From Euprymna scolopes (Eukaryota): 64,000 nt of DNA. A model generated the notes under the pieces. That model saw only the letters and a program-made list of their open reading frames with translations. It ran no database searches and had not been told where the DNA came from. Location: assembly GCA_053919585.1 (NCBI GenBank), contig CM132806.1. One strand, written 5' to 3'. This document shows, one piece after another, positions 2,878 through 59,800 of the stretch (its first letter is position 1; each line of letters begins with the position of its first letter). Position numbers and translations under genes: made by a program.

Positions 2878-3233
2878 AATTATTCAGACTACTGTTCTCA
2901 TCTTGTGTTATTTCCAACCTTTTCAGGTATCTTGTAAAATTTTGAAATCTGCACAGAATTTTGAATGGTACCTTTTAATCCATGGGAATAGCATGCTCTT
3001 GTTTCATCAGCCATGACCGGGTAGAAGTCCTATGTAATTCATAATTGTATTCTTTGTATTGTCCGCATTAAACCATCAACCTCCAGAAGAGTCACTTAAA
3101 ACTGAATTTTAAATCGTACTTTATCTCTCAACAAGAGTCCTTTGCAAAACACGAATAGCACTCAAAATATGAACAGTAGTTTGATTAATTCAAGCAAAAA
3201 TTATCAATTCTCATCTCCAAAATTCAGAAACAT
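2878..3233. mobile_element. Fold-back SINE/hammerhead family copy A (long left arm, very short right arm plus tail)
   Basis: Left arm GACTACTGTTCTCATCTTG...AATCTGCACAGAATTTTGAATGG...TAGCATGCTCTTG...CAGCCATGAC aligns to copy E; hammerhead partly deleted. Right end GAACAGTAGTTTG followed by tail TCTCATCTCCAAAATTCAGAAACAT. Confidence 0.7.
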
Positions 3234-4429
3234 ACTAATTCTTAATAGTTTACAGATTCTATTGTACAAAATGCTTTTCTGCAATTATTTCTGCTTTGGA
3301 ATTTTTTTTTTTATGAGGAAGGTTGAGTAAAAATGTCAAGTTTTGTATTTACTTGCTTTTTAATTAAAATTTACTCCAAATTTACTCATTAGACTATTGT
3401 ATCATAACTATAATAACCTAAAAATGTTATGGCATCTCAAATAGCATGTTTAAAAATACTAATTTAGATTAAATGCTTCGCTATGCACTTTGATGTGATA
3501 TAACTCAATTTTGTGTGGTCACTATTTTTAGATACCATTCATTGCATAATAGAGAAATTGGAAAGTTTTTCATTATGTTTGTATGATGAGCAAACTTTTC
3601 TGTAATAGAGAATGAACACAAAATCAGTATCTGTTTTAATAAGGTATGTTTGTTTTGAAAATATTTGGTAAACTTTAAATTGAGTTATTCCAAAAACTTT
3701 AACACAGAGCTTCTTAATCAAAAACTAAGCCGATCATATTCATTTCTACTACATTAAGTTTCATGAGTGTAATTAGAATAACTTTTTGAAAAGTACTTTT
3801 TAAAATATTAACTTTTTTTTTTTTTTTTTTTATAGTTGATCAAATGCTGATTGTTAACTTCAAATAGCTTTGGAGATTTGAGCAATTATAGATTGATCAA
3901 ATCTTTATTTGAGAGACAAGTATTGTAAAAATATATTTATACACTTGCACAACTTTAACATTAATAAAGTCTCCATTTAAGTATGAAATTTAATATTTTA
4001 ACGGTCATCTATTTAAAATTATTTTTTTATTTTTTTATTCTATTAGATAAGCTTAATTTTGTTAGCTTATTTAGACATGTTTAGATTTTTGGTCCAGATG
4101 TCTATAAAATTAACTTTCTAACTGTATAATTAAAATGTTAAATATTTTAGTTTAGTAATAAAATATTTCATACTTTATAAAAATTAAAATAAACAGAACT
4201 TATGATTTCTATAAGAACCGATATTTTGTAGTGTTAGTCTTCATGGTAATGTCAAAGTGATCTATTAATACCATGAAATTAATACTAAATCATCTGTCAG
4301 ACCAGAAAATAATTTTTCCTCTTTATAAATCATGACTAATAATGTCTATATGCTTCAGTAATTCTAGGTTGTTTATAAAAGTTGTGTTCATGGCAAATTA
4401 AGGTGTTTTTTGATAACTAGAAATGTTTT

Positions 4430-4890
4430 GGATTATTCAGACTTTTAGTTTTATTTTGGTTTTATATTTCAACCAATGTATCCCTCCTCCTCCTCCTTTG
4501 GATGCATCTTTTCAAACCTATGAGCATTTGTTGAATTCTAACCTGTATGTAATTTTAAACTGAAACCTTTAAGATTGTCTTCAGTTTATCAGCCATCACC
4601 AGGTAAAAATGTTACTTTTTTATATTATCACCTAGTAAGGATGAAACTTTTAGAGGTTATTTAGAACAATTTTCTTGCCTTTTATGTGTGACCTATCCAT
4701 GTTAATTCTCGTATGAATTTTTGGAGGCTAATATTGTCTGTGTATTCTTACTACTTATCACTATAGAATTATGGATGTTTCACATTCTCTCAACTTGGAA
4801 AAGATGCTCCTGAAGATCAGAGGTTACATCGGTTGAAATGTAAATGGAACGACTAAGATAAGGATAATTGTCTGAATAATTCTGAAGTAT
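4430..4890. mobile_element. Diverged fold-back hammerhead element (copy B)
   Basis: Ends GATTATTCAGAC...GTCTGAATAATT are inverted. Right arm has CCTGAAGATCAGAGGTTACATCGGTTGAAA. Possible TSD GAAATGTTTT/GAAATGCTTT (4420-4429, 4891-4900). Confidence 0.6.
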
Positions 4891-26666: not shown

Positions 26667-27089
26667 ATTTGTTTGAGCGTTCATTACTATCAAGATTTAA
26701 TGAAACAAAGTCGATCGTTTAAAATCAATTTTGCGAGCAAATTCTAAATATCTCCAATATCTTGTAAAGATTTTTTTAATTTAATGAATATAAAATTACA
26801 CGACTTTTTTGCAAAAGTTAAAAACAGTCAAAAGTTATAGCTCATTGACTTAGAGTGCTTCATGCCAAATTGATGGTTTATTATGGTTAAATTTGTGTTT
26901 ACTTTTACATTAAACACTAATCCCCATTAATCCCTAACTGTGCATCAAACGGATACCATAATACTTAGTTTGTTGCACTTTATCATAACAAAGTTCCAGG
27001 GAAAATTTCAGTCAAATCAAACCAGTAGTTCCTGAGAAAAAGTGGAACGAACAGACAGCCACAAAGAAATATTAACTATTACAGACAGT

Positions 27090-27377
27090 ATAATTTTTTT
27101 TTTTTTTTTTTTTAATTGGACCATTATCATCTTGTTGTCATGACGTTTCGGTCAATTATTCCTCTGGCTTTCGTCAGGTTAACCGCAACGGAATAGGAAT
27201 GTTGAATCCTCCAACTGCATCCACAGCAATTGCTGTTAACCTGACGAAGGCCACAGGAATAATTGACCAAAATGTCGTGAAAACAACTAGAAGATGAGGA
27301 TAATAGTCCACAAATAATTAAATAAAAAAATAATAAATTTTACAAATTTACTCCTCAAAAATATTTCTAAATTCAAT
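27090..27377. mobile_element. Headless mini fold-back with two inverted hammerhead motifs (copy C)
   Basis: ~75 bp inverted arms. Minus strand 27139-27180 reads AAC-CTGACGA-A-AGCCA-GAGGAATAAT-TGACC-GAAA-CGTC-ATG; plus-strand partner starts at 27241. Perfect 15 bp TSD ACTATTACAGACAGT (27075-27089, 27378-27392). Confidence 0.8.
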
Positions 27378-27428
27378 ACTATTACAGACAGTTTGAAATA
27401 TATTAACATTAAACCATTTTTTTTTTTT

Positions 27429-27935
27429 TGTTTCTGAATTTTTAAGTGAGAAATGATAATTTAGATTATTCACACTTACTGTTCATATTTCGAGTGTTAT
27501 TGTCACGTTTCAGCTGATGTAACCTCCGACTTTCTTCAGGTCTCTCTAATTGGACCCTGAAATCTGCACAGAATTTTGAATGGAACACTTTATTTAATCC
27601 ATAAAGATAGCATGTGCTTGTTCTGGCAGCCATTATGAATTTGCAATTGTATTCTTTGTATCGTCCATACTGAGAATTGAACCTTCAACCTCCAGAAAAG
27701 TGTCACTTCAAAATTCAGTTGTGATACTCTTCTGGAGATTGAAGATTCAATGTTCAGTCCAAGCGATACAATTGCAAATTACTGAAAAGTTTTCACTGGG
27801 TTGTTGATAGAATGAGAGCATGTCACCCATATGGATTCAATAAAGCGTCCTGTTTAACAGGAGACACCTGTTAAAAGTCGCATCGTCAAAAACATGAAAA
27901 TAGATGAGAACAGTAATCTTAATAATTCAAATAAT
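27429..27935. mobile_element. Fold-back SINE/hammerhead family copy D
   Basis: Left arm CACGTTTCAGCTGATGTAACCTCCGACTTTCTTCAGG...GAGAATTGAACCTTCAACCTCCAG; the right arm is its decayed reverse complement; tail on the left side. Confidence 0.75.
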
Positions 27936-27989
27936 ACATATTATTTATTTCTACTTAACTATTAAGATGAGACCTTGAACAACTTCACC

Positions 27990-32692: not shown

Positions 32693-33050
32693 TCTTTTTT
32701 TTTTTTTTTTTTTACAAAGAAGTCATCACTTATCAAGGCCTGGAGGCCACTCGTGGGTAAGGGTTATTGTGTGTACAGTAATCAATGGGATAATATTGTA
32801 GTAATCATTAGTAATGGAGATTTGATAAAGTGTCTTACTTAAGTTGACGGTTTATCAGGAATTTGTTTATGTTGGACTTGAAGACATCCAAGTTGTAGTC
32901 AGGTGGGAAACAGGCAAACGGAAGAGAATTCCACAGGCGTGCATTTCTAAGAAAGAAGCTTTGTTCATAGAATGTACGTTTTGATTTAGGCACAGATAAA
33001 GAGTGGAGAAAATTACTGACAGTGTTTTCAGCTAGACGGGATTTGAGGAT
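32693..33050 (-). mobile_element. CR1/L2-type LINE 3' end with poly(A)
   Basis: Reverse complement of the 51400-51700 terminus (..GAGTGGCCTCCAGGCCTTGATAAGTGATGACT..A(n)). Confidence 0.75.
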
Positions 33051-33269
33051 TATGTTTATAATTATTTATTTTCAACTGAAAGGGCCAAATGTACTGCTGA
33101 ACGGTGACCATGTTATGAGTGTTGAATTACAAAGACGAAGTTGGAGGTGGATTATAAAATCTGTAAACTAAATTCAAATCTAGTTGGATTTCGAAAGGTG
33201 TGAACCTTCAGATTCTCCGCAGCAAAAGATTAAATTTTGCAGTTTCTGTTTATAAGTATTTGAATATTA

Positions 33270-33944
33270 TGTTTCTGATGTTTTGAGATGAAGTTTTGAG
33301 ATGGTTATTCATATTATTTGGATTCATTGGACTGCTGTTCTCATCTTGAGTGTCATTTTCACAATGTTTCGGCCGATGTAGTCTCCGTCCTTCTTCAGGT
33401 GTATCCTGTCAAACTCGGGAATTTGGATGGAATTTTGAATGGAACCTTTTATTTACTTCACGGATGTAGCATGCTCTTCTTTCGTCAGCCATGACTGTAT
33501 CGAGGTCTTAAATAATTTGCAATTGTATTTTTCAGTCGCCCACATTGAGAATTGAACCTTCAACCTTCAAGAGAATATCACTTTTACAATTGATTTTTCC
33601 AAGTACTCTAACCACTGCGCCATCGGTTCTTGTGGACTCCATAGTGGTTAGAATACTTGGAAAAATCAATTGTAAAAGTGATATTCTGAAGGTTTAAAGT
33701 TCAATTCTCAGTATGGGCGACTGAAAAATACAATTGCAAATTATTTAGGACCTCAATCCAGTCATGACTGACGAAACAAGCACATGCTACCCCCGTGAAG
33801 TAAATAAAGGATTCCATTCAGAATTCCATCCAAATTCCCGAGTTTGACAAGATACACCCTTTAGAAGGTTGGAGGTTACATCAACTGAAACGCGAAAATA
33901 ACACTCAAGATGAGAGCAGTAGTCTGATGAATTAAAATAATGTC
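33270..33944. mobile_element. Fold-back (inverted dimer) of a tRNA-derived SINE with a Penelope-type hammerhead 3' end; best-preserved copy (E)
   Basis: ~300 bp arms are reverse complements around a centre at ~33630. Minus strand: A box TGGCGCAGTGG 33612-33622, B box GGTTCAATTC 33549-33558, hammerhead motif 33360-33401. Flanked by direct repeat TTTGAATATTA (33259-33269, 33945-33955). Confidence 0.85.
33360..33401 (-). ncRNA. Minimal type I hammerhead ribozyme-like motif
   Basis: Minus strand reads CAC-CTGAAGA-A-GGACG-GAGACTACAT-CGGCC-GAAA-CATT-GTG: CUGANGA and GAAA core, stem II (one mismatch), stem I CAC/GUG. Stem III palindrome ACGT has decayed to ACAT in this copy. Confidence 0.65.
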
Positions 33945-34019
33945 TTTGAATATTAATCTACGCAGTCCACGCTTCAGGCGAGGTCCGATGAAATTCTATC
34001 ATCAAGTTAGTTTCACTAG

Positions 34020-46600: not shown

Positions 46601-47292
46601 ATTGTTTTTTTTTGTTTTTTTATATAACTTCTGATGTTCCTACTTCCAGCTGTCCGAATTTGAAAACAATTGCTACACACATTTTGTATATATTTCAACT
46701 TTATGTAATGGCTAATCAAAAAACAGACAAAACTTTTTTCGATTATGTAGTAGAAAAAGAAACGTGTAGTGACATTGGTTGGTGCCACACAAAATAGTTG
46801 TGAAGGATTAAAGAGGATAACGAACAGCATCCAGACCTCCACTAGAAGGACAAAGAAAATGCTGGAATTGTGAGGCGGCTTATTGTCACTCAAATTCCAG
46901 AGTTCATTGGTGGTTGTGCTCAGCAAAAACTCAATGGCAAACGGATGTTGTAAGAGCACAAAAAGATTTGAAGCAGTTATGGAAAGAATTCTGAGGAATA
47001 CCACTGATAAAGATGTTTGAAAACTATTAATTATATCATTGTAGAGTTGGGCTGGATAGCAGTGACTGAGATGATGTTAGTGATTGAGAATAGTGAAACA
47101 GGATACAGAACTGATTATCAGTCTGTGTATCTATGGTGTTTACCGATGGAATAAAGACTGTCACTATTCTGAAATTTAGAAGGAGTGGGTCAGCCCTGAT
47201 TTTGAATTCATTGGAACGAGCTCAACTGACCTGGGGTGAATGCTCTAAAACAATATCCATTTGAAACAATTGGTTGAACACAAATGACTTCA

Positions 47293-47805
47293 TATCATTT
47301 GGATTCGTCGGATTGCTGTTCTCATTTTCACTGTTATTTGCACAAAGTTTCAGTCGATGTAACCTCCAACCTTCTTCAGTTCTATCTTGTCAAACTCTGG
47401 GAATCTGCACAAAGTTTCAAACGGAACCCTTTATTTAATCCACAGAGGTAGCATGCTCTTGTTCCGTAAGCCATAACTGAGTAGAAGCCTTTGCACATGT
47501 ATTTTGTCTGTCGCCTGCACTGAGGATTGAACCTTCAACCTCCTGAAGAGTGTAACAGTGACATTCAAAATACAGTCGCTAATTACTTAGGACTTCTACC
47601 TAGTCATGGCGTGACAAAATGAGAGCGTGTTACCCCTGAATAAAAGGTTCCATTTGAAATTCTCTGCAGATTCCTGATTGTGACCAGATACATCTGAAGA
47701 CGGTCAGAGGTTACATTGAGCAAAACATAAAAATAACATTCGAGATAAGCACAGTGGTCTGACTAATCCAAATAATCAATCCTCAACTCCAAAATTCTGA
47801 AACAT
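47293..47805. mobile_element. Fold-back SINE/hammerhead family copy F
   Basis: Left arm TTTGGATTCGTCGGATTGCTGTTCTCAT...GTTTCAGTCGATGTAACCTCCAACCTTCTTCAG; right arm ...CATCTGAAGACGGTCAGAGGTTACAT...AATCCAAATAAT plus tail CCTCAACTCCAAAATTCTGAAACAT. Confidence 0.78.
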
Positions 47806-48455
47806 AATTGGAAATAAGTGTTTGTAAAATAGCCACTTGTGTTCGATGAATTATTTACAATGCATTGTTTCACATAGAAGATATTTTGTTACGGCATTCA
47901 TCTTAGGTTTATTGAGCCAACTCCTCTGAGTGAATTCAGTGAGGGCTGACCGAATACAACAGTCTATTAGCAACGTTAAGACTTCACTGGCGGACACCAT
48001 AGATACATGGACCGGCAATCATTTATGCATCTTGCTTCACCATTTTAAATTGGTTATGGCGTCTTCTAGTCCCGAAGTATTGATAGTTATAATTAAGTCT
48101 TTGTTTCATTGCGGCTGAAGAACTTGACCAAACCAGCGAAGCAGCTCTGTGCAGAGAGTGCTATTTGAAAGGAGATTTGTGTTTGGACCACTGCATTTGA
48201 AACAACTATAAACTTGGAGGATGCAACGTAGACAATAATGATCAAAGACTTTCAGTCTACAAATGTCTGCGACCTGCACTCATAGAGGAGGTTGGTACAA
48301 ACAAGGACTTGGTAAATTTGGATTTTTATTAAAACGGGCATTTCTGGTGTGTCCGTTTATATCCTCTTCCCCTTTAACCTATAATTGTTTCCCAACATTA
48401 ATTTACCTGAAAAGGTGTTAAAACATTTAAAAAACAAACGAGACGTTAACTGGAA

Positions 48456-48894
48456 TTATTATTTGGATTCTTCGGACTACTGTTCTCATCTTGAGTGATA
48501 TTTTCACGTTTCAGTCAATGTAACCTCTGAGTTTTTCAGGTGTATCTTTTTGAACTCGGGAATCTACATAAAATTTCAAATGGAACCGGTTATTTAATCC
48601 ACAGAAGTAGCATGCTCTCATTCTGTCAGCCATGACTAAGTAATTCACAATTGTGTTTTGCACAGAAGATTCAACCATCAACCTCCAGAAAAGTGTAACT
48701 TACAACTGATTTCAACCACTTTATCCACTACGCTATGGGACACATGTTCGACAGAAAGATTTCTGAGTTCAACAAACTACACCTGAAGAAGGTCGAAGGT
48801 TACATCAACTGAAACATTATGAAATAACACTCAAGATGAGAACAGCAGTCTAAAGAATACAAATAACCATTCCTCATCTCAAAGACTCAAAAAT
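48456..48894. mobile_element. Fold-back SINE/hammerhead family copy G (full left arm, 5'-truncated right arm)
   Basis: Minus-strand A box TAGCGTAGTGG (48725-48735) in a tRNA-like context GTCCCATAGCGTAGTGGATAA. Plus-strand hammerhead CAC-CTGAAGA-A-GGTCG-AAGGTTACAT-CAACT-GAAA-CATT-ATG 48780-48821. Degenerate TSD GTTAACTGGAA/GTTGGCTGGAA. Confidence 0.8.
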
Positions 48895-50184
48895 GTTGGC
48901 TGGAAACTTTTACAGTGCACAACATACAAATAAAAGTATATTCTTTTAAGAAATGCTTAACAGATAATTGGTATTAACAAGTAAAGGTTCGTAAAATACT
49001 AATGTGAAAAGAACTGTGGTGTAAGGTCAACCAGGCCTGTAATTAATTCACAGCAAAGGCCAACAGTCAATTAGTACATTCTTTGCTAAATTACTCCCTC
49101 GCACCTAGCAGCCAATTTGCCTTTCCTCTTTTGTGAGATGCGATGACGATTGATCTCCAGTTATTTAACTGAAATTCTTTCTAAATGACCTTCATATGCT
49201 GATATTATCATAAGTATTTTTTTTTTATAATTAATGAGTCACTTCTTATCAAAGATAAAAGTCACTTGAGAATAAGTGTTACTGTGCTTGGTGAATGATG
49301 AAGAATATTATGAGAGGATTGAAAATAAGTAAATTGAACAAGCAAAATTTGATTATGCACTTCACCTTTTAAACTATATGAAATGCCCCATTAGTCATAG
49401 ACAAAGATGTGTCATAAGTCTGCTCATAATAATCTGCAGGGAGTCATTTTTTTTTTTATATCACACTTTGCGTTTTTTCAGTTGACTTTCCTGTTATAAT
49501 TGATGCTATTCTCATTTGTTTGACTAAGGAATCACTACTTATTAAGGCTAAAAGCCAATTGAGGATACGGGTTAATTAGATAATAGATTGTCAGTTGAGT
49601 AATGGAGAATGTTATGACACGGTTGAAAATGATAAATAAAATGAACAATATTTGATTACTTATGAGGACGGTTAATGGTAAATATTTGTTGGCACAGAAT
49701 TTGAAAACGAGCTGCAGAGAAAGCCAAATCAAGTTTCCGTGTCTCTACATGGTATGTAATGGACTTTGCAAACTAAATAAAGAAAACAGTTTGGTCTGTA
49801 TTGTGTAGACTATTCATTGACGTTTGTTATCGTCACCTGTACTTAGTCAAACACTGATATTTTCCAGAATTTAACTGCCCTCCACCCTCCCTTTCAAAAA
49901 AAATGAAAATTTAAAAAATGAAATCTAACCTAAATATTTTTAAAACTGAAGAAAACTAATTTGGGTCAATAGTAAAAAAAACTTAATTCTCCACCACAAT
50001 TTTCCAGTTCAAATTGAGGAACCATTTGGTTATATGTCTCGAGATATCGCTAACTGGACCAGAATTATATTGAGTTTTAAGGATGAAAATCTTAAAGGAA
50101 AACGTATGAAAGGTAAAAACTATACTCGTCTAGCTATCACCACTATCAACAACTTTTGCCCATTCTATCTGTGATCTAAATCTA

Positions 50185-50455
50185 AATGCAGATTTCAGGA
50201 ACAAAGCTTCTTTCCTAGAACTGCCTGCCTGTGAAACTCTCTTCTGCTTTTCAATTGACTACAGTATGGTTGTCTTCAAGTCCAATGTAAACAAGTTCTC
50301 GTTCAGCCGTCCCCTTAAATAATAAAATTATACTCGATTTTCACCATTAATGATTACTACACTGTTGTTCCGGTAACCACTATATGTTCGTTAACACTTA
50401 TCCTCAAGGGGTCTTTGGGCCTTGTTAAATGGTGACTCCTTTGTATTAAAAAAAA
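50185..50455 (+). mobile_element. CR1/L2-type LINE 3' end
   Basis: Same terminus as 51440-51700, ending CCTTGTTAAATGGTGACTCCTTTGTATT-A(n). Confidence 0.7.
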
Positions 50456-50664
50456 GGTATAGTAAGGAAATATAATCTAAGAAATAAGCGAAAACTTTTT
50501 TCCAAAGTAAAGATCTGTAATCGTAGCGAACATTTGGTTTTGAATGAAAGGTTTTTATATTTATTTTAATAAGTTATGAATAAAGAGCATTTGAATTTTA
50601 AACCATAATAGCGGTAAAAATCATGTTTACGTGGGTAATATTTTTGTTTTGTTCTGTTTGAAAG

Positions 50665-51705
50665 CAGAGCATCTACTCAAAGTATTAATGCTGGAGTCCC
50701 TCCTGGGCCCAACTCTCTTCCTGATCTACATCAATGATCTCCCAAATCACATCCTAAGATCATTCGTAGACATTTATGCTGACGACACTACCATCTATGG
50801 CGACACTTCAAGGGCCATATATGACCAAGTTCTCTCCGATTCTCTCTCCTCTGGTCTTGATCATGTGATGCAATGGGAAAAGAGGTGGCTGGTTAATTTT
50901 AATGCATCTAAAACCAAGCTTCTATCTTTCCATCATCATAGCTCTGATCGCTGGCTGGCATCAATTGAAATGAATGACTTGTCTTGGGGAGGCTCCATAT
51001 TTTGACAATCTTCTGGGTCTGACCTTTACTCCTAATCTGAAATGGAACACTTACATCAAATTTGTTGCCAAGGTCGCTGGAAAAATGATGGGATCATTCT
51101 ACTATTCCAGTAGATATCTCACTGCCGATGCAATTCTCTACTTGTAAAAGAGCCAAGTATGTTCAAGGATGGAATACTGTTGCCACATCTGGCAGGAGCT
51201 GCTAGAAAGACTTATCCTGCCTTGACAGAGTTCAAAATAGACTTTGTAGTCTAGTAGGTGATGCCCTTTTCTCTTTGCAACCTCTTTCCCACAGAAGAGA
51301 TGTTGTGAGCCTGTTTCTGCTTTATCATTATTTTCTTGGCAAGTGCTCGTCTGATCTCTAATCTATGGTCCCTCCTCGCCAAACATTCGTTTAGCTGAAA
51401 CCACTATCAATAATTTCCCCAATCTTTATCTGTGCCCAAATCAAAGCTTCTTTCTTAGAACTGCACACCTGTGGAACTCTCTTCCGTTTCTCTGCTTTCC
51501 AACTGTCTACAATATGTTCATCTTCAAGTCCGATGTGAACAAGTTTTTGATGAGCCATCCCTTAAGTAATCCAATTTACCAAATTTCCACTAATAACGAT
51601 TACTACAATATTGTCCTATTGACTACCCCACACACATTAACATGTATCCTCGAATTGCCTCTGGGCCTTAAGTGGTGACTACTTGGGAAAAAATAAATAA
51701 ATAAA
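50665..51705 (+). mobile_element. 5'-truncated CR1/L2-type LINE
   Basis: LGPTLFLIYINDLP...IYADDTTIY...WLVNFNASKTK (ORF 50631-51005), MEYCCHIW, PLSHRRD; (AAAT)n tail. Confidence 0.88.
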
Positions 51706-52314
51706 AATCTACTTACATGTGAAGGAATGACGTAAATGTTATATGAAAGTGATCTTGCACTGTTTATTAATTAAACTGAAAAAAACGGAATAGATATCGA
51801 AAATATAAAGAAAAGTAATTTGTAATGCTTCAATTCTGAATTTTGCTGTTCCTGTATTCTTAGGAAGGGAGTGATTATTATTTAATGTCCAAAACCTGTA
51901 TATTATGGAGAAGATTATAAGGATATTAAAAGTAAATAATTTAGGTGTTGTAAAGTAATGTTCCTAGGACACAGTGTATAAGAGATACGTTGGAGTAGGA
52001 AATTTATATGGAGGGAAAATGATTGCTATCCTCTTGTTGAACGGCATACTTAAGAGAAACAGATATCTTGGAATAAATGTAATAATATTTGTAAATATTA
52101 AAAAATGTCAAAATATTTTTTTGAAAAATGTGTTCGGAAGTGTTGTAGGTAATACGTAGAAAAGATACGTAGATTATTTTCCTATAACGACTCAAGTTGC
52201 GCTTGATAAATTGACGTTATTATACAGATGATAAATAATGGCATTTTTAATGGTCGACTTTTCGTATTAATCCTTAACCTAGAAATTTATTGTAAAGGCA
52301 AATTTTAAAAATTA

Positions 52315-52870
52315 TCAGCAGGGAGACCTGTCGTTGCCCGGAATTGAACGAAGATCAATGAATATTCCACACTTCCAATACTTTTATCGTCATCGAAGTC
52401 GTTGAAATCACCCATTTTTCAATCAAATCGATTGAGTGCCTGCTCTAGGCTGAGACTCACTGTGGTTTTTAGTTCGCAATACATTGTATTCTACATTGCA
52501 CTGTAGAGAACTTACTGTTGATTTTATAAAATTATTTTTATATAATCGTTTGAATTAAAGTTTAAAATGCAAAAGTCAAGTATTATAGTTCAGTTGTGCT
52601 CTAAATAGAAACATTCATGTTGAACAATGCTCCTGTCTTAAAGAATCTACTGTTGATTTTATATGCTGGGCCCTTCTGCTTGTGTGGTGATAAAACTTCT
52701 CAAATGCACTTGTGATGTTAGGCTGTATAAGAGTGTTAACTTTGCTCCAAATCAGACTGTTCTTTCTTTCATCAGATTTATTTGATTCTAGTGACAATAA
52801 AAGTATCGGAAGTGTGAAACATCTGTTGATCCGTATTCAATGCCGGGAAATGTCGAGTCTCTCTGCTAGT
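52315..52870. mobile_element. Non-autonomous Helitron-derived sequence related to unit 22244-22781
   Basis: AGCAGGGAGACCTGTCGTTGCCCGGAATTGAACGAAGATCAA matches 22246-22290; right end GCCGGGAAATGTCGAG...GCTAG|T. Confidence 0.55.
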
Positions 52871-53299
52871 AATATAATAAATGATGAAAACACAAGTTCA
52901 TATCAAGAATTTTAAAACAAAAACTATTTCTCTTTGTTCAAAAAGATTTTTTTTAATTTATAGCTGAGGAAAGAAAGATCAACCGTAAAAATAAAAGGAA
53001 TGGAAAAAAAGAAGAAAAAAAAATATGGTGCTTGTCTAGATTGGTAATCTTTTAAATAAACGCATTTCAGGTGAAAACATTACATACGTATCATTTCAAA
53101 AAATTCCAGAACGTTTTTTTGGTTTTTCTCTTTCTATTTTAATATCTAACATTGAGGAGAGTGGGGGGTATCAATAGTATCACACTCAAAAGAATCAAAT
53201 CGATAATCAGCAGAAAAGGCCTCGATAGTTGATAGGAAAATACTTGTTTGAATTAAGCAAGAATTTTCCTAATAGATTATCCATTCATAGGCAAGCTGC

Positions 53300-53426
53300 C
53301 AGTCCGAACTCTAAGGATGTGTAACATAGTCGTCTATTTCTTTCTAACGGAACCAACATGTTGTATGCAGACTTGGTCGCAAAGGAAAATGATGACAACT
53401 TTTCTTGGTGGAGGAAAAAGGTATTT
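53300..53426 (+). other. Candidate non-coding first exon and splice donor of RBM12
   Basis: Non-repetitive island ending in AAG|GTATTT (GT at 53421-53422), ~3.4 kb upstream of the acceptor. No transcript evidence. Confidence 0.25.
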
Positions 53427-53969
53427 ATTTTGTCATTTCATGTAACCAAAACAGCTACTCACTATCAGTTTTACAAAGTTCAACTTTTTTAAAAATAGGG
53501 AGAGAGAGCAGACTTTTGCAGGCTGTCACTGGCCAACCTGCCAGCGGTGGTTGTTTCCTTTTCTTTCGTCTCTCTTTTTGTCTCCTTATCCTGCTTCCAT
53601 CTTTTCTCCATATTCATCCTTATATATAAATATACATATTTGAGTGCTTAAGCCATACACCCAAAATGCTAATGCGATAATGTTACAAATGGACTTGCTC
53701 CTCAGAGCGTAATGAGACATTCCAACCTTATAAATCAAATCTCTAGTGTTTTTGTTAGTTTGTAACTCACTTAGTCAAAGAGTTAAGCACTGATTACTGA
53801 ATTAAATAATTTGGAGTTTAAAAGTTTTTTAATAGTTTTGATGGGTTTTTTTTTTTTTTTTTTCTTTCTTGCTTCACTTTCATTTCTGGTATTGTTCAGC
53901 CTAGAAACAGTGACAGAATGAATTAGTCTTTTTATGATTTAAAAAAAAAAATTCTGATTTTGTTTTAGC

Positions 53970-54330
53970 AGGGATGCTAGATATTCACCTGTCATCTTAT
54001 ACATTCCAACTGAGAGAGCTTTTTAAGATTCTAACCATCCCAAGTGCAGTTGCTTGTATCTCTTTTGCACGTGGTTCACCGGGTATATTTGCTAGATACT
54101 TTTTGAAATTCTTTTCCATGAGTATGGTTGTTCCTATAATTATTTGAATGATGGAAATCTTCCTAAGGTTCCAATTTCTTTTCATGTCATACATAATATG
54201 TTGGTATCTTTTCCCTCTCAGTTCTGTTTAACATTGGAGACACTAACTTCTACCAGTTTACATTTTTTTTGTGAGTACAGAATATGTTACGTCACTGCTG
54301 ATAATTGTGTCTTATTGCATTACTGTCATA
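53970..54330 (-). mobile_element. R4/Dong-like RLE retrotransposon C-terminal remnant
   Basis: KKCKLVEVSV...EREK...MKRNWNLRKISIIQIIIGTT...YLANIPG...EIQATALGMVRILKSSL fits the R4-clade pattern D...K..KY..W...P.VIG..G...Q..ALLG...ILR. Confidence 0.6.
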
Positions 54331-54559
54331 GCAGCGACTGAGATCTGTGATTGTCATCGATGCATCTTTTTCGGAATCGATAAATATTTGCTTCTCATGT
54401 GCAGCCATGGTAATGTGTCTGGCAAGCTGGGAAAAAAAAAACAACTTTCATCCAAATGAAGGGGCAACAATGCTGTGCTATAAACAACTTTTATTGAGTT
54501 AACATTTCTTAGCAAAATTCATTGCGGTTATATTTTGTAATGTTTCTCCCATGGTACAG

Positions 54560-54975
54560 AAACATATCTGCAATTTAATTGGCCCCACCCTATCTTCTTT
54601 TCTGCAACCTCTCTCTCACAGGCGTGAGTCTCAGTATTTTTTTTATAAATACTATTATGGCATGTACTTTTCAGAATTGTCTGATCTATTCCCTGCTTCT
54701 TTTGTTCCAGCTTGTTTGATTCGTTGATCTAGTGGTCTTCACCAATTTGTTGTTTTGATAACTCATTGTAATACATCTTTCTATTCCAGGAGCTTCTTTC
54801 CAAGAACTGCAGACTTGTGGAACTCTCTTCCTGCTGACTATTTCCTCATACTTTAACCTTGGTCTTTTCAAGACTAATGTCAATAGGCATTTACTGTCTT
54901 TGCGATAATCATCTTCTGCACTTCTTTACATTAAATGGCTTCACGCCTTGTCGGAAACAATTTCTATAAAAATAA
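54560..54975 (+). mobile_element. CR1/L2-type LINE 3' fragment
   Basis: NLIGPTLSSFLQPLSHRR...SFFPRTADLWNSLP remnant. Confidence 0.7.
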
Positions 54976-55176
54976 ACGTTGAAAGATACTAATGCAATAT
55001 GAATCTCTTATTTGATTATCAGTACAAAAAATGTGGAATTTTAATGGTGACCATTACCATTCTGTTCAGCCTGGGTCCCTCTTTTCCCATAGTCAATTAG
55101 AAATATACTCTTTCTCCAACGTCCAGCAACATCATCATCTTCGTTTAATTATCTCACATCAAAATATTTAAAATCT

Positions 55177-55660
55177 ATTCTTGAATTAGGCTTTCATCCA
55201 AATGTAACCTCCGACCTTCTTCAGGTGCATCTTGTCAAGCATGGGCATCTGTACCGAATTTCGAACGGAACCCTTTATTTAATCCATGGTATTTAGCATA
55301 CTTTCATTTTGTCAGCCATGACCGAATAGATGTGCTAAATAATACGCAGTTGTATTCTTATTACCTGCACTGAGGATTGAACCTTCAACCTCCCAAAAGA
55401 GTGCCACTTAAAACTGAATTTTACTAAGTACTTTATCTGTTATGCCATGGGGCATTACGGAGGTTGAAGATTCAATCCTCAGTGTGGGCTATACTCAGAA
55501 TACAACTACAAATTACTGGTTGACAGAATAAGAACATGTTACCCCTGTGGATTAAATGAAGAGTTCCGTAAAAATTCTGTGTACATTCTCAAGTTTAATG
55601 AGATACATTTGAAGAAGGTCAGAGGTTACATCAGCCGAAATGTGAAAATCAAGATTATGG
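55177..55660. mobile_element. Fold-back SINE/hammerhead family copy H
   Basis: Left arm ATGTAACCTCCGACCTTCTTCAGGTG...GAGGATTGAACC...TTATGCCATGGGGC; right arm starts near the B box (GGTTGAAGATTCAATCCTCAG) and runs to TTGAAGAAGGTCAGAGGTTACATCAGCCGAAA. Confidence 0.78.
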
Positions 55661-56412
55661 AGATGAGACTCTTCTCTCACAGTGTCTCAGGAGGGAGAGG
55701 TTCTCCTCTTTTTACTTTATGAAATTATTACATCATCTGTGTGCGTGTATGTGTTTCTCTCTCATTGCTATCTTAGGATTGGGGGAGACTCTCTTCTCTT
55801 ACTGTATAAGAGTATTAAATATTACTTTGAATGGAGGAGGTTCTTACCCCCCTCCCTTCACAGGCCCCATCATCACAAGAACAACGCACTCTTCAAAAAT
55901 AGAATTTATTTCACTCTTCCCAAATTCTGGAATGTGCTCATCATCACTAGTGACCCCAGGTGACACATACTAGATACAAGTCCAGACAACTTGTCAACTC
56001 ATGACTGATACTATCAGAAAAAAATAATTCTTTTCTCTATTTTGCATTTCACCAATTAAGTTGCAAGTATTTTTTCTTCTTTTTTTTTTTTTCAGAAAAC
56101 TAAGGTTTTATATCATCTCTTTTTTGATTTAATAATACTGTCACAAAGCTGATGAAATATCTTTGCATATGATTGTGTAGATAATGTTTAAAATACAATT
56201 ATAATGTGACCCCACCACCCACCCAGTCTGATATTTTTTCCCTTTTTTTTTTTTTTTGTTTTCCTGATCCATGTAAGTATAAAAAGTTCTGTCACACTTC
56301 AATCCAAAATCACGGATTGAATTGACACCTTAAGAATATCCAGTTCTTGTTTTTATGCAAATTGATGATAGAATTATTTAACTAATTTGAACTTTTCAGA
56401 GAAAAATGTTGC

Positions 56413-56630
56413 TTTTTCAGAACCCGTTTCTGCAAATTTTTTAACATTAATAACAGTTCTTTTTCAGAACTTGTTTCTGCAAATTTTTAAACTTTAATAA
56501 CAGTTCTTTTTGTTTTGTTTTGGTTTTTTTTTCAGAATTTGTTTCTGCAAATTTTTAAACTTGAATAACAGTTCTTTTTCAGAACCCATTTCTGCAAATT
56601 TTTCTAACTTTAATAACAGTTCTTAGAACC
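56413..56630 (+). repeat. Minisatellite, ~4 x 47 bp
   Basis: Unit TTTTCAGAAC(C/T)NGTTTCTGCAAATTTTTAAACTTTAATAACAGTTCT. Confidence 0.9.
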
Positions 56631-56770: not shown

Positions 56771-56795
56771 TTGTTTTTTTTTTTTTTACTTACAG
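56771..56795 (+). promoter_or_regulatory. Polypyrimidine tract and 3' splice acceptor of the RBM12 coding exon
   Basis: T-run followed by ACTTACAG|AAATC-ATG; exon would start at 56796, 5 nt before the ATG, implying an upstream non-coding exon. Confidence 0.8.
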
Positions 56796-56800
56796 AAATC

Positions 56801-59800
56801 ATGTCCGTCATCATTCGCCTGCAAGGCCTGCCATGGTCAGCTAGTGCGGTGGATATCCGGCAGTACTTTCAAGGACTCAGCATTCCAGATGGTGGAGTAC
56901 ACATTGTTGGTGGGGAACGGGGTGATGCGTTTATTGCGTTTGGTTCGGATGAGGATGCCCGACAAGCGATGCTGCGTACGAATGGCCAGATAAATGGGCA
57001 AACTGTGCAACTGTTGTTGAGCAGCAAGACAGAAATGCAGAACGTTATTGCTTTGGCCCGTGAGGCAGTGCCCAGTCAGACATATGCCAAGCAGGCCACA
57101 GTACTACCTCCACTCCCAGCAGTGCCAACTACAAGACCCCCACCTAATGACCACATGCATCCAGTTAGTCTGCCAAACCATAGCAGCTTTGTTCCAGATA
57201 TGAGCGTTCCACCGCAGCAGAGAAACCTTGATTATCCGAATCGAAGGGACCTTCCACCAATTGCTGTTGATAGGCATTCCACTCCTGTCGCTCCTACTAA
57301 TCCCATTGTCCCAGGAATGATTCCTTTCCCTGGGCCTCAACCAACAAACTTCCCCAGTCAACCTAATATGCCGCCACGTGAAAATTACTTTGTCTCAGAG
57401 CAGGATAATGCCAAAAACCGACCAAATATGGAATTCCGGCCCCCAGATGGTGGAACTAACGATTTCCAGAATAGGAGACCTGCTTTTCCTCCTGCTCAAG
57501 ATCCGCACGTGCAGGCAAATGATCCCAGACGCTTTTCTAACACAAATACAGGTGTTGGCTTTGGTACGATGCGGCCAGCATTCCACAATTTCCCACCACC
57601 ACCAGATAATTTAAGGAATCCTCCTATGCCAAACACGGCCATCCAGCCTCCAAATATGACATCTAAGCCTCCTCCAGTAGCCGACATCCGACCTCCATAT
57701 TCTGCTGAACGACGTGAAGAAGATTTTGGTGTAAATCGAGGAAACATGAGACCAGACTCGAGTGCTCATCATATGCTGCCGATGGAAATGAAAAGACCCG
57801 AACCAGGACGTATTGATTATCAGCTGGGATCTGTCCGTACTGACCCTATAAGACACCCTGTTGGTCTTCCAATGGGAAAGGACACTATGAGCCAACCAGA
57901 TGTTCCTCGGCCTAATGAACTCAATCGACCGGATGTTAAACCTGAACAAGGATTACATGTGCAGACTCTTGCTCGAAATGAGTCCAACCGATCTAATATG
58001 GGTCGCCATGAACCCCCAGTTAGATCTGATATGGGTCGACATGAAGTACCGCCTAGACCTGACTTGGGACGAAACGAACCAGTCAAACAAGACTTGAGAC
58101 GACAAGAACCCGGAAGACCTGACATGGGTCGACCAGATGGTGGACGGACCTATCCAAGTAGAACGGACGGTGTGAGACATGAATCAAGATTTGATGCTCC
58201 GCGGCATGAACCACCCCGGGTAGAGGCACCGCGAACTGAACATACTCGGTCGAACTTAGAAAGAACCGAATCTCTCAGGCAAGAAACAGCAAGGATGGGT
58301 ACAAGCAGATCGGATTCAAGTCGCCCCAGTTCTTCAGCAAGACCTGATGCATCAAGAACTGAAACACGATCTGACTCGAGTCGGAATGATTTACCTAAAA
58401 GCGATTCTACAAGACACGATTCTAGTCGTTCTGATTCTGGTCGCCATGATTCCAAGTCCGAATCTAGGCATGAGTCTCGATCCGAATCTTCGAGTAGATA
58501 CGAATCTAGCAGCAGATATGATTCTGGAAGGCATGAACGGCATGAACGAGGTCGAGATGAAGGCAGCAGATATGATCGCCATGAACGGAGTCGTGAGGAT
58601 AGTAGCCGTTATGACCGCCGCGATAACCGCAGAGATAGCAGATACGATGGACACTATGATAGCGGAAGTAGACATGAAGGGAGATATGATGGGGGACGCT
58701 ATGATAGCCGACATGACTCAAGTAGTCGATATGAATCGAGGAATGAAACCCGACATGATAGCAGCCGTGGAAGTGATAAACCAAGAAGTGGGACAAGCTC
58801 AAGAGAATTTGACCGATCTGGAAGAGATGAACTGCAAAAGTCTGACCCCTCTAGCTCAGATCAACACATGGGTGGAACAAGTAGTTCCCAGTCAGATTCA
58901 TTAAAAAATCCTGTCTCTACTAACATGCCACCCAGACAGGGGGACATGAACAATGCCAGAAAAGGCAACATGGATATGGATGGACCTATGAACCGCGGAG
59001 GGCACATGAACCGAGGTGGCAGGTCTAAAAACGATTACGGTGATGAAAGCAGAAGAAATTATGATTATGGCCCACCTCAACATGATCAGGGATATCCTGG
59101 TGATGGGCAACGATTTGGTGACAGACCCCCTGGTCACAATGATGGACCTTCTTACAGTGGCCCTGGCATGAAAGAAGATTGTGGTATGCAAAATCCATAT
59201 AAAGACAATGATCCGATGGGATTATCTAGGGGAATTTTGGGTGATGCTCCCCCAGGATTCCGCGGAACACCAAATGAACCAAACGATGGCAAGTGGGATG
59301 AAAGGTATGGAATGCGGGATGATATGAGACGCGCAAACCAGTCTCGTGACAACTACCCAGGTGACTGGCACAATGATGGCATGAATATGAGGCCGCCGTT
59401 CCCTCGGCCTGGTTCTTGGAATGATATGCCCCCAAACCAGCCTCCTTACCCTAGAAACGATGGTCCCCCACCATTTGGCATGAATGAGCAATATGGAAGA
59501 TATGATGGACCGAACCGTAACGATAGGGTCCCACCTCCTGGATACATGCACATGGATGACAGAAATTGTGGACCACCAAATGAAATGAATTATGGTCCCG
59601 AAGGTGGAATGAGGCCTGATGGTATGAATGATGATCAGATGCGAGGTGTTAAACGCGGTCACAGAGAGTCTGATTTGTATATTGAGGTTGTCGGCTTACC
59701 CTTTACCGTTGGTTATAGGGACGTTCGGCGTTTCTTCTCAGGTTGTGTCATCCCACGAGATGGACTAAAAATCATTAACAATGAGAAAGGGCGGCGTGTA

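What the first reader, a model, noticed from the sequence alone, without database searches (positions are those of the whole stretch)
33270..33944. tRNA-headed SINE with a Penelope-type hammerhead 3' end that always occurs as a head-to-head palindrome (8 family members in 64 kb)
Seen: each ~300 bp arm, read outward from the centre, has an A box (TGGCGCAGTGG here; TAGCGTAGTGG in copy G), a B box ~53 nt later (GGTTCAAT(T/C)C), a unique body, and then the by-eye consensus CAC-CTGAAGA-A-GGTCG-GAGGTTACAT-CGGCC-GAAA-CGTT-GTG. Relatives lie at 2878, 4430, 27090, 27429, 47293, 48456 and 55177; none is a lone arm. Established: CUGANGA/GAAA/NUH is the hammerhead core. Minimal type I hammerheads with a tiny palindromic stem III (here ACGU) and an extra nucleotide after A9 are known from Penelope-like element termini and cleave as dimers. 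Schistosome Sm-alpha is a precedent for a hammerhead-bearing SINE. Inference: a non-coding Pol III element that borrowed a Penelope 3' end, with divergent Pol III promoters at its centre and a ribozyme on each strand. I do not know of this exact architecture being described.
Basis: partly seen in the sequence, partly recalled or inferred. Interest (0 to 1): 0.92.

Follow-up and report, generated by a model that had tools for sequence, protein, structure and literature searches.

The report
Hammerhead-tailed SINE inserted as inverted pair
This is an old, dead copy of a very abundant short non-coding jumping element of a mollusc, with a tRNA-gene-style promoter motif at its head and a small self-cutting-RNA motif near its tail; its mirror-image shape looks like the insertion scar that Penelope-type retrotransposons are known to leave, so it is an interesting variant of known things rather than a new kind.

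Summary
Window 33270-33941 is a head-to-head pair of one repeat, flanked by a 14-bp target duplication. The left arm (368 nt) is full length. The right arm (304 nt) is 85% identical and starts inside the A box. A profile search finds 14 arms in the window, forming 7 head-to-head pairs with no lone arm. An eighth, headless pair shares only the 3' module.

The pairs are not fixed palindromes. The second arm is cut off at a different point in each pair. In 6 of 6 scorable pairs, one arm carries a conserved ~30-55-nt tail extension and the other lacks it. This matches the published insertion signature of Penelope-like elements, and it argues against a MITE and against a designed divergent-promoter unit.

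Contigs from related species restore an intact minimal type I hammerhead motif. They also show a discrete 5' end about 21 nt upstream of the A box.

Several points remain unproven:
- No tRNA or Rfam hammerhead model matches.
- Stem covariation is inconclusive.
- No Penelope partner could be examined.
- Pol III transcription and self-cleavage are untested.

This scan has already noted the same element type many times elsewhere in this genome. My verdict is a new variant of a known kind, of moderate interest.

The parts
33256..33269 (.). left target-site duplication GTATTTGAATATTA
   Evidence: 14 bp with 1 mismatch against 33942-33955. Matches this good occur in about 3% of random pseudo-boundaries.
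33270..33637 (-). full-length arm, read head to tail on the minus strand: 5' leader, A box, B box, body, hammerhead motif, tail and tail extension
   Evidence: The 5' end matches the family 5' end ..TCCGCAAGGACCCG seen in 279-295 related-species contigs.
33612..33622 (-). A box TGGCGCAGTGG (consensus TRGCNNAGTGG)
   Evidence: the A+B pattern occurs once, against 0.01 expected.
33548..33558 (-). B box GGTTCAATTCT, 53 nt after the end of the A box
   Evidence: It is conserved in 9 of the 11 arms aligned; the other two start 3' of it.
33360..33401 (-). minimal type I hammerhead-like motif. The predicted cut is between 33363 and 33362. This copy has an A-G mismatch in helix II and ACAU instead of ACGU.
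   Evidence: Family-majority letters restore a perfect 6-bp helix II and ACGU-U.
33313..33359 (-). common tail downstream of the predicted cut (GAAAATGACACTCAAGATGAG...CCAAATAAT)
33270..33312 (-). tail extension present on this arm only, ending ..TCAGAAACA. It is conserved in the long-tail arm of the other pairs.
33638..33941 (+). inverted partner arm. It is 5'-truncated inside the A box and has the short tail ending ..AAAATAAT.
33855..33894 (+). decayed hammerhead motif of the right arm (core CTTTAGA; short form GAAACGCG)
33942..33955 (.). right target-site duplication GTCTTTGAATATTA
2878..3233 (.). pair A. The minus arm reaches the 5' leader. The plus arm starts only at the GAAAC of the ribozyme and carries the long tail.
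4410..4885 (.). pair G, an old and decayed pair of the same family
27090..27377 (.). headless inverted pair of a related family. Its hammerhead has a GUC site. It has a 15-bp perfect TSD (27075-27089 / 27378-27392), and its 3' module is 75-79% identical to that of the SINE.
27432..27936 (.). pair B. Both arms are truncated (about q66 and q50), and the long tail is on the minus arm.
47289..47806 (.). pair D. The arms start at q63 and q112, and the long tail is on the plus arm.
48457..48896 (.). pair E. The minus arm is full length, with A box TAGCGTAGTGG at 48725-48735. The plus arm starts at q221 and carries the long tail.
55190..55707 (.). pair F. The minus arm is full length and the plus arm starts at q77. 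The tails are too decayed to score.

Best explanation
Window 33270-33941 is one decayed insertion of a high-copy, roughly 350-400-nt non-coding retroposon of a mollusc. Its arms differ by about 15%.

The element has three modules:
1. A head with Pol III-type A and B boxes, about 21 nt from a discrete 5' end.
2. A family-specific body.
3. A 3' module made of a Penelope-type minimal type I hammerhead motif plus a 50-100-nt tail. The motif has the CUGAAGA core, one unpaired A, a 6-bp helix II, GAAA, a palindromic ACGU helix III and a 3-bp helix I.

Inferred mechanism:
- The head drives Pol III transcription outward through the 3' module.
- The 3' module is what a Penelope-like RT/GIY-YIG enzyme recognises.
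- Integration at a staggered break primes cDNA from both nicks, once from the true RNA 3' end (long tail) and once from an internal site (short tail).
- The two cDNAs meet head to head.

The product is a full or nearly full copy abutting an inverted, variably 5'-truncated copy, with a tail extension on one side only and a 14-15-bp TSD around the whole pair. On this reading the palindrome is an insertion scar, not a functional design.

What is shown: the family, its pairing, the variable junctions, the one-sided tail, the TSDs, the motif content and the discrete 5' end. What is inferred: Pol III transcription, ribozyme activity, the Penelope partner and the two-nick priming model.
For: - Pairing: 14 arms form 7 head-to-head pairs with no lone arm.
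- Variable junctions: the partner arm starts at about q27, q50-66, q77, q112, q221 or q286 of the full arm.
- One-sided tail: exactly one long-tail arm and one short-tail arm in 6 of 6 scorable pairs, with a conserved extension ending ..TCAGAAACA. Independent 50:50 assortment would give this with P about 0.016.
- TSDs around whole pairs: 14 bp with 1 mismatch for this copy and 15 bp perfect for the headless pair.
- Published match: PLE insertions often have an inverted 5'-truncated copy adjacent at the 5' end and a 30-40-bp tail at one end only (PMC8557442; PMC8969392). Min-HHR pairs 100-700 bp apart on opposite strands are reported in Schistosoma (PMC4209133).
- Head: the A+B box pattern occurs once against 0.01 expected. 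In the copies of this window, four long arms (A, C, E, F) reach the same leader; separately, 279-295 related-species contigs diverge right after ..TCCGCAAGGACCCG.
- Ribozyme motif: majority letters in related genomes give a perfect helix II GGUCGG/UCGACC and GAAACGUU|GUG. Helix II is paired in 81.8% of cells. A dimer through the palindrome is predicted. The unpaired nucleotide 5' of helix II and the small palindromic helix III are the published PLE min-HHR traits.
- Shared 3' module: the same module occurs without the head in the 27090-27377 pair at 75-79% identity, z 7.8.
- Abundance: the family is present in three organisms' runs, and family members are present in RNA libraries.
Against: - No Penelope RT/GIY-YIG element could be examined. 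The window's only long ORF is an RRM protein, so the partner is inferred from insertion signatures alone.
- Rfam finds no hammerhead or tRNA family even at E up to 10. ARAGORN finds no tRNA, and at very lax settings it gives inconsistent calls.
- Helix II covariation is not beyond shuffles: 35-128 of 500 shuffles reach the observed values. It is what random CpG decay would give.
- Six of nine scorable arms carry the short site GAAACGTG, with G at position 17 and no helix I.
- Sense-strand T4+ runs are few (9 against 53 A4+ runs), but no fewer than the A-rich composition predicts.
- PolyA RNA reads come from other copies, on both strands, and show no pile of ends at the predicted cut.
- Two arms end in A13 and A22 runs, which would also fit a poly(A)-dependent LINE.
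- Five of the seven pairs show no significant TSD.
Confidence: 0.62

Rival explanations
1. The arms are simply 5'-truncated 3' ends of an autonomous Penelope-like element. The A/B boxes are a chance feature of its 3' UTR, and there is no separate SINE.
For: PLE insertions are heavily 5'-truncated and commonly leave short inverted pairs. The headless 27090-27377 pair shows that the 3' module exists without the head. No tRNA model recognises the head.
Against: Four long arms in this window and 279-295 contigs in a related species stop at the same leader, which is not a random truncation series. No arm continues into coding sequence. The A+B pattern sits exactly at that 5' end, with 0.01 expected by chance.
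Confidence: 0.12
2. It is an ordinary LINE-dependent tRNA-type SINE (for example with an RTE or poly(A)-type partner) that happens to carry a hammerhead-like motif. The inverted pairs arise from twin priming or from nested insertion into earlier copies.
For: The arms at 27432 and 27093 are followed by A13 and A22 runs. Partner arms differ in a 3-nt indel in three pairs, as separate events might. The partner arms of B, D and F are no closer to each other than to other copies.
Against: Twin priming produces non-overlapping inverted segments, whereas here both arms repeat the same 3' region. Seven of 7 pairs are head to head with abutting 5' ends. The one-long-one-short tail rule holds in 6 of 6 pairs. 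TSDs flank whole pairs, not single arms. The arm identities fit a star phylogeny with same-age arms.
Confidence: 0.1
3. One reading: the palindrome is itself the functional and transposing unit, with divergent Pol III promoters at the centre and a ribozyme on each strand.
For: Copy C has two near-complete heads facing outward. All family members in the window are paired.
Against: Only C has two heads. In the other pairs the second arm lacks the A box, or both boxes, or everything up to the ribozyme. Junction positions differ in every pair. Each strand's transcript contains only one sense ribozyme, so the pair gives no cis dimer. A read-through RNA folds into a 278-bp hairpin that buries the core.
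Confidence: 0.06
4. It is a MITE or foldback DNA transposon with long terminal inverted repeats.
For: It has a long inverted repeat with a TSD, and Rfam reports only long-hairpin (plant MIR-like) similarity.
Against: The termini are asymmetric, with a tail extension on one side only. The inner boundaries vary. The TSDs are 14 and 15 bp rather than a fixed short length. The arms have a polar head-to-tail organisation with A>T strand bias.
Confidence: 0.03

Closest known systems
Penelope-like element (PLE) insertions and their pLTR minimal hammerheads (Evgen'ev & Arkhipova 2005; Cervera & de la Pena 2014, PMC4209133; Craig et al. 2021, PMC8557442)
   Same: An inverted 5'-truncated copy abuts the 5' end, and a 30-40-bp tail is present at one end only. 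TSD length is variable. The minimal type I hammerhead has an unpaired nucleotide 5' of helix II, a short helix I and a tiny palindromic helix III. Opposite-strand min-HHR pairs 100-700 bp apart were already seen in Schistosoma.
   Different: There is no RT/GIY-YIG ORF and no direct pseudo-LTR. The unit is a ~350-400-nt element with a discrete 5' end carrying Pol III A/B boxes. A partner PLE was not examined here.
Sm-alpha / Sj-alpha SINE-like elements of schistosomes (Ferbeyre et al. 1998; Laha et al. 2000; reviewed in PMC6765202)
   Same: A short non-coding retroposon that joins a Pol III-type promoter to a hammerhead ribozyme.
   Different: Sm-alpha carries a canonical, efficiently cleaving hammerhead and is typically tandem or dispersed in direct orientation. 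This family has the PLE-type minimal motif followed by a long tail and sits in inverted pairs. The host is a mollusc. Neither cleavage nor Pol III transcription was tested here.
Metazoan non-LTR retrozymes (Cervera & de la Pena 2020, PMC7229834; Li et al. 2026 preprint, 10.64898/2026.07.22.740005; remark in PMC8969392)
   Same: Non-autonomous hammerhead-bearing elements proposed to depend on PLEs and related to PLE pLTRs. [quoted passage not shown]
   Different: Retrozymes are defined by tandem units that yield circular RNAs. This family shows no tandem array in the window, has a promoter-like head, and is dispersed as inverted pairs.
tRNA-derived SINEs of molluscs (Ceph-SINEs, MetaSINEs, bivalve HCD-SINEs)
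   Same: A short dispersed element with an A/B-box head, a body and a tail module.
   Different: The two Ceph-domain motifs quoted in PMC5786205 are absent from the window. Those SINEs have LINE (RTE and similar) tails and insert as single direct copies. I found no published SINE with a Penelope tail.

Membership tests
SINE (tRNA-type, SINE2) | Short non-coding element with a discrete 5' end | tested here: met
   No ORF. Full arms are about 350-370 nt. Four long arms and 279-295 related-species contigs stop at the same leader.
SINE (tRNA-type, SINE2) | Internal Pol III promoter: A box TRGCNNAGTGG and B box GGTTCRANNCC at tRNA-like spacing | tested here: met
   TGGCGCAGTGG and GGTTCAATTCT are separated by a 53-nt gap. 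The pattern occurs once against 0.01 expected. A second A box, TAGCGTAGTGG, is in pair E. This is a sequence match only.
SINE (tRNA-type, SINE2) | Head recognisably derived from a tRNA (cloverleaf or homology) | tested here: not met
   ARAGORN finds 0 genes. Rfam tRNA gives no hit at E up to 10. Relaxed ARAGORN gives inconsistent isotypes.
SINE (tRNA-type, SINE2) | 3' end shared with an autonomous partner retrotransposon | not testable with these tools
Only a headless pair sharing the module was found.
SINE (tRNA-type, SINE2) | Transcription by RNA polymerase III | tested here: inconclusive
   Sense-strand T4+ runs are rare (9 against 53 A4+ runs), but composition explains this. Only polyA libraries were laid, and their reads came from other copies on both strands.
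Penelope-like element insertion / PLE-dependent non-autonomous element | Inverted 5'-truncated copy adjacent to the 5' end of the main copy | tested here: met
   Seen in 7 of 7 pairs, with a different truncation point in each.
Penelope-like element insertion / PLE-dependent non-autonomous element | [quoted passage not shown] | tested here: met
   Six of 6 scorable pairs have one long and one short tail. The extension is about 30-55 nt.
Penelope-like element insertion / PLE-dependent non-autonomous element | Hammerhead motif of the PLE minimal type in the terminal region | tested here: met
   The core, the bulged A, the 6-bp helix II, the ACGU palindrome and the 3-bp helix I are all present in the family-majority sequence. 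This is a motif-level match only.
Penelope-like element insertion / PLE-dependent non-autonomous element | A PLE with RT and GIY-YIG in the same genome sharing this terminal sequence | not testable with these tools
   None in the window. Earlier scan notes mention PLEs and ribozyme-capped palindromes in this genome, but these were not checked.
Hammerhead ribozyme, type I | Conserved core CUGANGA ... GAAA with helix II between | tested here: met
   (helix II paired in 81.8% of cells).
Hammerhead ribozyme, type I | Cleavable site (position 17 not G) followed by helix I | tested here: inconclusive
   The long form GAAACGUU|GUG (3 arms here, and the majority in related genomes) and the GUC form in the headless pair meet the feature. 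The short form GAAACGUG (6 arms) has G17 and no helix I.
Hammerhead ribozyme, type I | Match to the curated Rfam covariance models | tested here: not met
   No hammerhead family hit at gathering score or at E up to 10. PLE minimal forms are known to escape classical descriptors (PMC4209133).
Hammerhead ribozyme, type I | Compensatory covariation in the helices | tested here: inconclusive
   Four helix II pairs change on both sides, but shuffles reach the observed values 35-128 times in 500.
Hammerhead ribozyme, type I | Self-cleavage | not testable with these tools
   This needs in vitro transcription of monomer and dimer. There was no pile of RNA ends at the site in polyA reads.
Metazoan non-LTR retrozyme | Tandem head-to-tail units, each with a hammerhead | tested here: not met
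   TRF finds no tandem array of this family in the window, and all copies are inverted pairs.
MITE / foldback DNA transposon | Fixed terminal inverted repeats and fixed TSD length | tested here: not met
   The termini are asymmetric, the inner junctions vary, and the TSDs are 14 and 15 bp.

The most novel reading that the evidence does not exclude
This may be the first clear case of a Pol III-promoted SINE that is mobilised by Penelope-like elements. On this reading, its obligatory inverted-pair form records an integration in which two RNA molecules are reverse-transcribed from the two nicks of one target site. They may be held together through the palindromic ACGU helix III of their hammerheads. 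The 3-nt indel that sits exactly at the predicted cleavage site, and that differs between partner arms in three pairs, would then be a footprint of ribozyme cleavage followed by template jumping.
Probability: 0.15. Interest if true: 0.75.

Novelty: new variant of a known kind. Interest (0 to 1): 0.45.

Why it matters
Penelope-like elements are abundant in invertebrates, but their integration mechanism is still undefined. A short, very high-copy, non-coding passenger that reproduces all their odd insertion signatures gives thousands of small, easily aligned records of that mechanism. Those signatures are the inverted truncated copy, the one-sided tail and the long TSD.

It would also extend the SINE concept to a third class of partner, after LINEs and LTR elements. 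In addition, it links the schistosome Sm-alpha design (Pol III promoter plus hammerhead) to PLE-dependent retrozymes in a second phylum.

In practice, such pairs create hundreds-of-bp perfect hairpins inside introns. These are potential dsRNA sources and are easily mis-annotated as MITEs or miRNA precursors, as the Rfam MIR-like hits here show.

Tried and rejected
- Rfam at gathering threshold on the whole window, and at E up to 10 on 33200-34000 and 47200-55800, gave no hammerhead or tRNA hit. It returned only generic long-hairpin MIR hits.
- ARAGORN found nothing at default settings. At very relaxed thresholds it gave mutually inconsistent calls, which I rejected as evidence.
- T4-terminator avoidance: sense strands have 9 T4+ runs against 53 A4+ runs, but composition-preserving shuffles expect 11.6. 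I dropped it as support for Pol III.
- Stem covariation was not beyond shuffle controls. My by-hand tally of the two helix II CpG pairs keeps pairing in 5 of 8 arms, as expected from neutral decay.
- RNA evidence: polyA reads and RNA-library contigs on the element come almost entirely from other copies. The flanks are silent and no ends pile up at the predicted cut.
- Empty-site test in related species: their contigs cover only the repeat and not the flanks, so there was no orthologous site.
- Two scans of metagenome contigs for the core+loop pattern gave 0 hits.
- Search for a Penelope ORF in the window: the only long ORF is an RRM protein. I did not run a six-frame Pfam scan of all short ORFs.
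- TSDs for the five older pairs were not significant.
- The Ceph-SINE domain motifs are absent.
- Literature searches for a described tRNA-SINE with a Penelope tail found none. Lunse et al. 2017 is not held.
- I considered whether partner arms being no closer to each other than to other copies (pairs B, D, F) means separate insertions. I rejected this as uninformative, because a star phylogeny of same-age copies predicts the same identities.
Full report
**1. What is at the coordinates**

The region holds a large inverted repeat. The repeat finder gives three collinear arm segments (33313-33360/33894-33941, 33398-33569/33687-33858, 33572-33616/33643-33687) at 85-98% complementarity. BLAST of one arm against the window gives 86% identity over 305 nt to its partner.

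Read outward from the centre on the minus strand, the left arm has these parts:
- a 15-nt leader;
- TGGCGCAGTGG at 33612-33622;
- GGTTCAATTCT at 33548-33558, 53 nt further on;
- a body;
- CAC-CUGAAGA-A-GGACGG-AGACUACA-UCGGCC-GAAA-CAUU-GUG at 33360-33401;
- a tail of about 50 nt ending CCAAATAAT at 33313;
- a further 43 nt ending TCAGAAACA at 33270.

The right arm begins inside the A box (..CCATAGTGG at 33638). Its B box has one mismatch, its core is mutated (CTTTAGA), and it stops at the short tail (33941).

A 14-bp direct repeat with one mismatch flanks the whole pair (33256-33269 and 33942-33955). Matches that good occur at about 3% of random pseudo-boundaries.

**2. The family in the window**

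A profile built from eleven arms finds 14 arms and nothing else. They form seven pairs, always a minus-strand arm followed by a plus-strand arm, so the heads face each other. They lie at about 2878-3233, 4410-4885, 27432-27936, 33270-33941, 47289-47806, 48457-48896 and 55190-55707.

It has no head or body, and its hammerhead has a different helix II and a canonical GUC site. No arm is alone. The core+loop pattern occurs 9 times against 0.12 expected, and the A+B box pattern occurs once against 0.01 expected.

**3. The pairs are not fixed palindromes**

Against the full left arm, the partner arm starts at a different position in each pair:

| Pair | Where the partner arm starts |
|---|---|
| This copy (C) | about q27 |
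| B | both arms truncated, about q50 and q66 |
| F | q77 |
| D | q112 (its other arm at q63) |
| E | q221 |
| A | about q286 |

In four pairs (A, C, E, F) one arm reaches the same 5' leader and abuts the truncated partner with at most a few filler bases.

The outer ends are asymmetric in a regular way. In A, B, C, D, E and the headless pair, exactly one arm carries a conserved extension (..CATTCCTCATCTCAAAAYTCAGAAACA, about 30-55 nt) and the other arm ends at CCAAATAAT. That is six of six; independent assortment would give it with P of about 0.016. The long tail sits on the full-length arm in C, on the arm that is slightly the shorter at the head in B, and on the truncated arm in A, D and E.

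A perfect 15-bp TSD flanks the whole headless pair (27075-27089 and 27378-27392). The five older pairs have no significant TSD.

**4. Comparison with published insertion signatures**

Craig et al. 2021 (PMC8557442) describe Penelope-like insertions as highly 5'-truncated. [quoted passage not shown] Goubert et al. 2022 (PMC8969392) repeat this. Cervera and de la Pena 2014 (PMC4209133) noted pairs of minimal hammerheads 100-700 bp apart on opposite strands in Schistosoma mansoni and attributed them to truncated PLEs.

The structure here reproduces all of these features. It is incompatible with a MITE or foldback element, which needs fixed termini, fixed junctions and a fixed TSD length. It also differs from L1-type twin priming, whose two inverted segments do not repeat the same 3' region.

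**5. Is it a separate short element or just PLE debris?**

The long arms stop at a common position. Loose ends of reads and contigs from this and related species continue 14-16 nt beyond 33622 with the consensus ..TCCGCAAGGACCCG. They then diverge into unrelated AT-rich sequence in 279-295 contigs. Arms A and C contain that leader too. This discrete 5' end lies about 21 nt upstream of the A box, a plausible distance for a Pol III start, although that is inference.

The head is not recognisably a tRNA:
- ARAGORN finds none.
- Rfam's tRNA model gives nothing at E up to 10.
- Relaxed ARAGORN calls are inconsistent.

So 'Pol III-type promoter motifs' is supported and 'tRNA-derived' is not shown. 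Sense strands carry only 9 T4+ runs against 53 A4+ runs, but shuffles that keep the A-rich composition expect 11.6, so this is not independent evidence.

**6. The hammerhead**

In this old copy the left-arm motif has an A-G mismatch in helix II and ACAU in place of ACGU. The right-arm core is broken.

Contigs from two related organisms laid at 88% identity or better show the family-majority letters:
- U21 and A36, giving a perfect 6-bp helix II GGUCGG/UCGACC;
- GG in the loop;
- G at 33365, restoring GAA-ACGU-U|GUG.

This matches the published Penelope min-HHR traits: an unpaired nucleotide 5' of helix II, a short helix I and a tiny palindromic helix III. Cofolding predicts an intermolecular helix through the palindrome.

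Against this:
- No Rfam hammerhead model matches.
- Helix II is paired in 81.8% of cells with four double changes, but shuffles reach these values 35-128 times in 500. My tally of the two CpG pairs (5 of 8 arms keep pairing) is what neutral CpG decay predicts.
- Conservation is no higher in the core than in the body, as expected for dead copies.

**7. An oddity at the predicted cleavage site**

Arms fall into two forms. The long form is GAAACGTTGTGAAAA (C left, D left, E right). The short form is GAAACGTGAAAA (C right, D right, E left, both B arms, F right). The headless pair has GAAACGTC(G/A)TGA, so the long form with a GUC/GUU site is ancestral. The short form has G at position 17 and loses helix I.

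The 3-nt difference spans exactly the predicted scissile bond, and partner arms disagree in three pairs. There are two possible explanations:
- The mundane one is slippage at the tandem CGT-CGT, either in the genome or during reverse transcription.
- The more interesting one is a GU-microhomology template jump across ribozyme-cleaved ends.

I cannot distinguish them here. In the related genome, depth at the long-form site is about 20 times that at the short-form site, although mapping partition between the arms affects this figure.

**8. Age and single-event origin**

Arm-to-arm identity is 85% in C, 80% in E and 67-71% in B, D and F. Between-pair identities are roughly the products of the per-copy decay factors. 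This is what same-age arms in a star phylogeny give, so the data are compatible with both arms arising in one event. The TSDs around whole pairs point the same way. All copies in the window are old.

**9. Expression and abundance**

Runs labelled as RNA from the same organism (a mollusc, by the run labels) and from metatranscriptomes hold parts of the element. When laid, 86-87% of raw reads run on into unlike sequence, the unique flanks have essentially zero depth, and both strands are represented. The signal therefore comes from other copies, some inside polyadenylated transcripts. One abundant relative reads ..GGAAACGTC|ATAACACTC. No ends pile up at the predicted cut. In a related organism, 47,412 contig pieces matched at 88% or better, so the family is very abundant and shared among related species.

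**10. Consequence of the pair shape**

Each strand's transcript contains only one sense ribozyme, so the pair provides no dimer in cis. A read-through RNA of 33270-33941 folds into a hairpin with about 278 inter-arm pairs. Its MFE is -415 to -424 kcal/mol, against -151 for shuffles, and the core is buried. This, together with the variable junctions, argues that the palindrome is a by-product of integration and not a functional design.

**11. The shared 3' module**

From the hammerhead to the end of the long tail, the headless pair is 75-79% identical to the SINE arms (z 7.8 against shuffles). That is as similar as SINE copies are to each other. The module therefore exists apart from the SINE head and body, as expected if it belongs to, or is shared with, another element such as the autonomous partner.

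No such partner is in the window. The only long ORF is a 1481-aa RRM protein, and two metagenome scans found nothing. Earlier notes of this scan mention PLEs with terminal ribozymes, and a ribozyme-capped palindrome around a GIY-YIG remnant, elsewhere in this genome. I could not check them.

**12. Novelty**

All components are published:
- PLE inverted copies and tails;
- PLE minimal hammerheads;
- Pol III + hammerhead Sm-alpha (PMC6765202);

I found no paper describing a promoter-headed, dispersed SINE with a Penelope-type tail and inverted-pair insertions. The Ceph-SINE motifs are absent.

This scan has already flagged the same element type many times on other DNA of this genome. Follow-ups there rated it a new example of a known kind. 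My own tests lead to a similar place: a new variant of a known kind. The Penelope dependence is supported by three concordant insertion signatures, but the partner, Pol III transcription and catalysis remain untested.

Noticed in passing
window 33361-33365 (-), 33890-33894 (+), and the same site in pairs B, D, E, F: A 3-nt indel lies exactly at the predicted hammerhead cleavage site (GAAACGTTGTG versus GAAACGTG). Partner arms of one pair disagree in three pairs (C, D, E). The short form has G17 and no helix I. Either slippage at CGT-CGT or a template jump at cleaved ends could explain it.
   Followed up: partly
window 27090-27377: A headless inverted pair has a GUC-site hammerhead on each strand, a perfect 15-bp TSD (27075-27089 / 27378-27392), one long tail, and one short tail followed by an A22 run. 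Its 3' module is 75-79% identical to that of the SINE family.
   Followed up: partly
window 27419-27431 and 27096-27117: A13 and A22 runs (T runs on the plus strand) directly follow the outer end of two arms (pair B left, headless pair left). They could be untemplated addition, polyadenylated templates or insertion into A/T microsatellites. I could not decide between these.
   Followed up: no
all seven pairs, window 2878-55707: In six of seven pairs the longer (5'-complete) arm is on the minus strand, antisense to the long plus-strand RRM ORF at 56771-61216. This may be the usual antisense bias of intronic retroelements, or it may be chance (two-sided P about 0.13 for 6 of 7).
   Followed up: no
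window 32880-33040: A different repeat just left of the element has enormous summed depth in RNA-library contigs (up to 1.4-1.6 million) and many raw polyA reads. Loose ends read ..GCAGACGAAACAG. I did not identify it.
   Followed up: no
window 56771-61216 (+): A 1481-aa open frame has three RRM_1 matches near its C-terminus (E 7.9e-28). It is probably a giant exon of the host gene. Degenerate 47-nt and 115-nt tandem repeats lie just upstream at 56412-56624.
   Followed up: partly
window 33897-33927 (reads of run X23): One polyadenylated transcript somewhere else in the genome carries a close relative of the tail (165-203 reads, one strand). Its site reads GGAAACGTC|ATAACACTC, a canonical GUC site with a shorter linker.
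   Followed up: no
window 33556-33703: Rfam plant-MIR precursor models (MIR2630, MIR4227, MIR7807) score 55-59 bits on the centre of the pair. This is purely because it is a long near-perfect hairpin, which is a likely source of false miRNA or MITE annotation.
   Followed up: yes
window 62742-63327: An AT-rich degenerate tandem array with a 20/40-nt period (TTGTACAATT-type units). It is unrelated to the finding.
   Followed up: no
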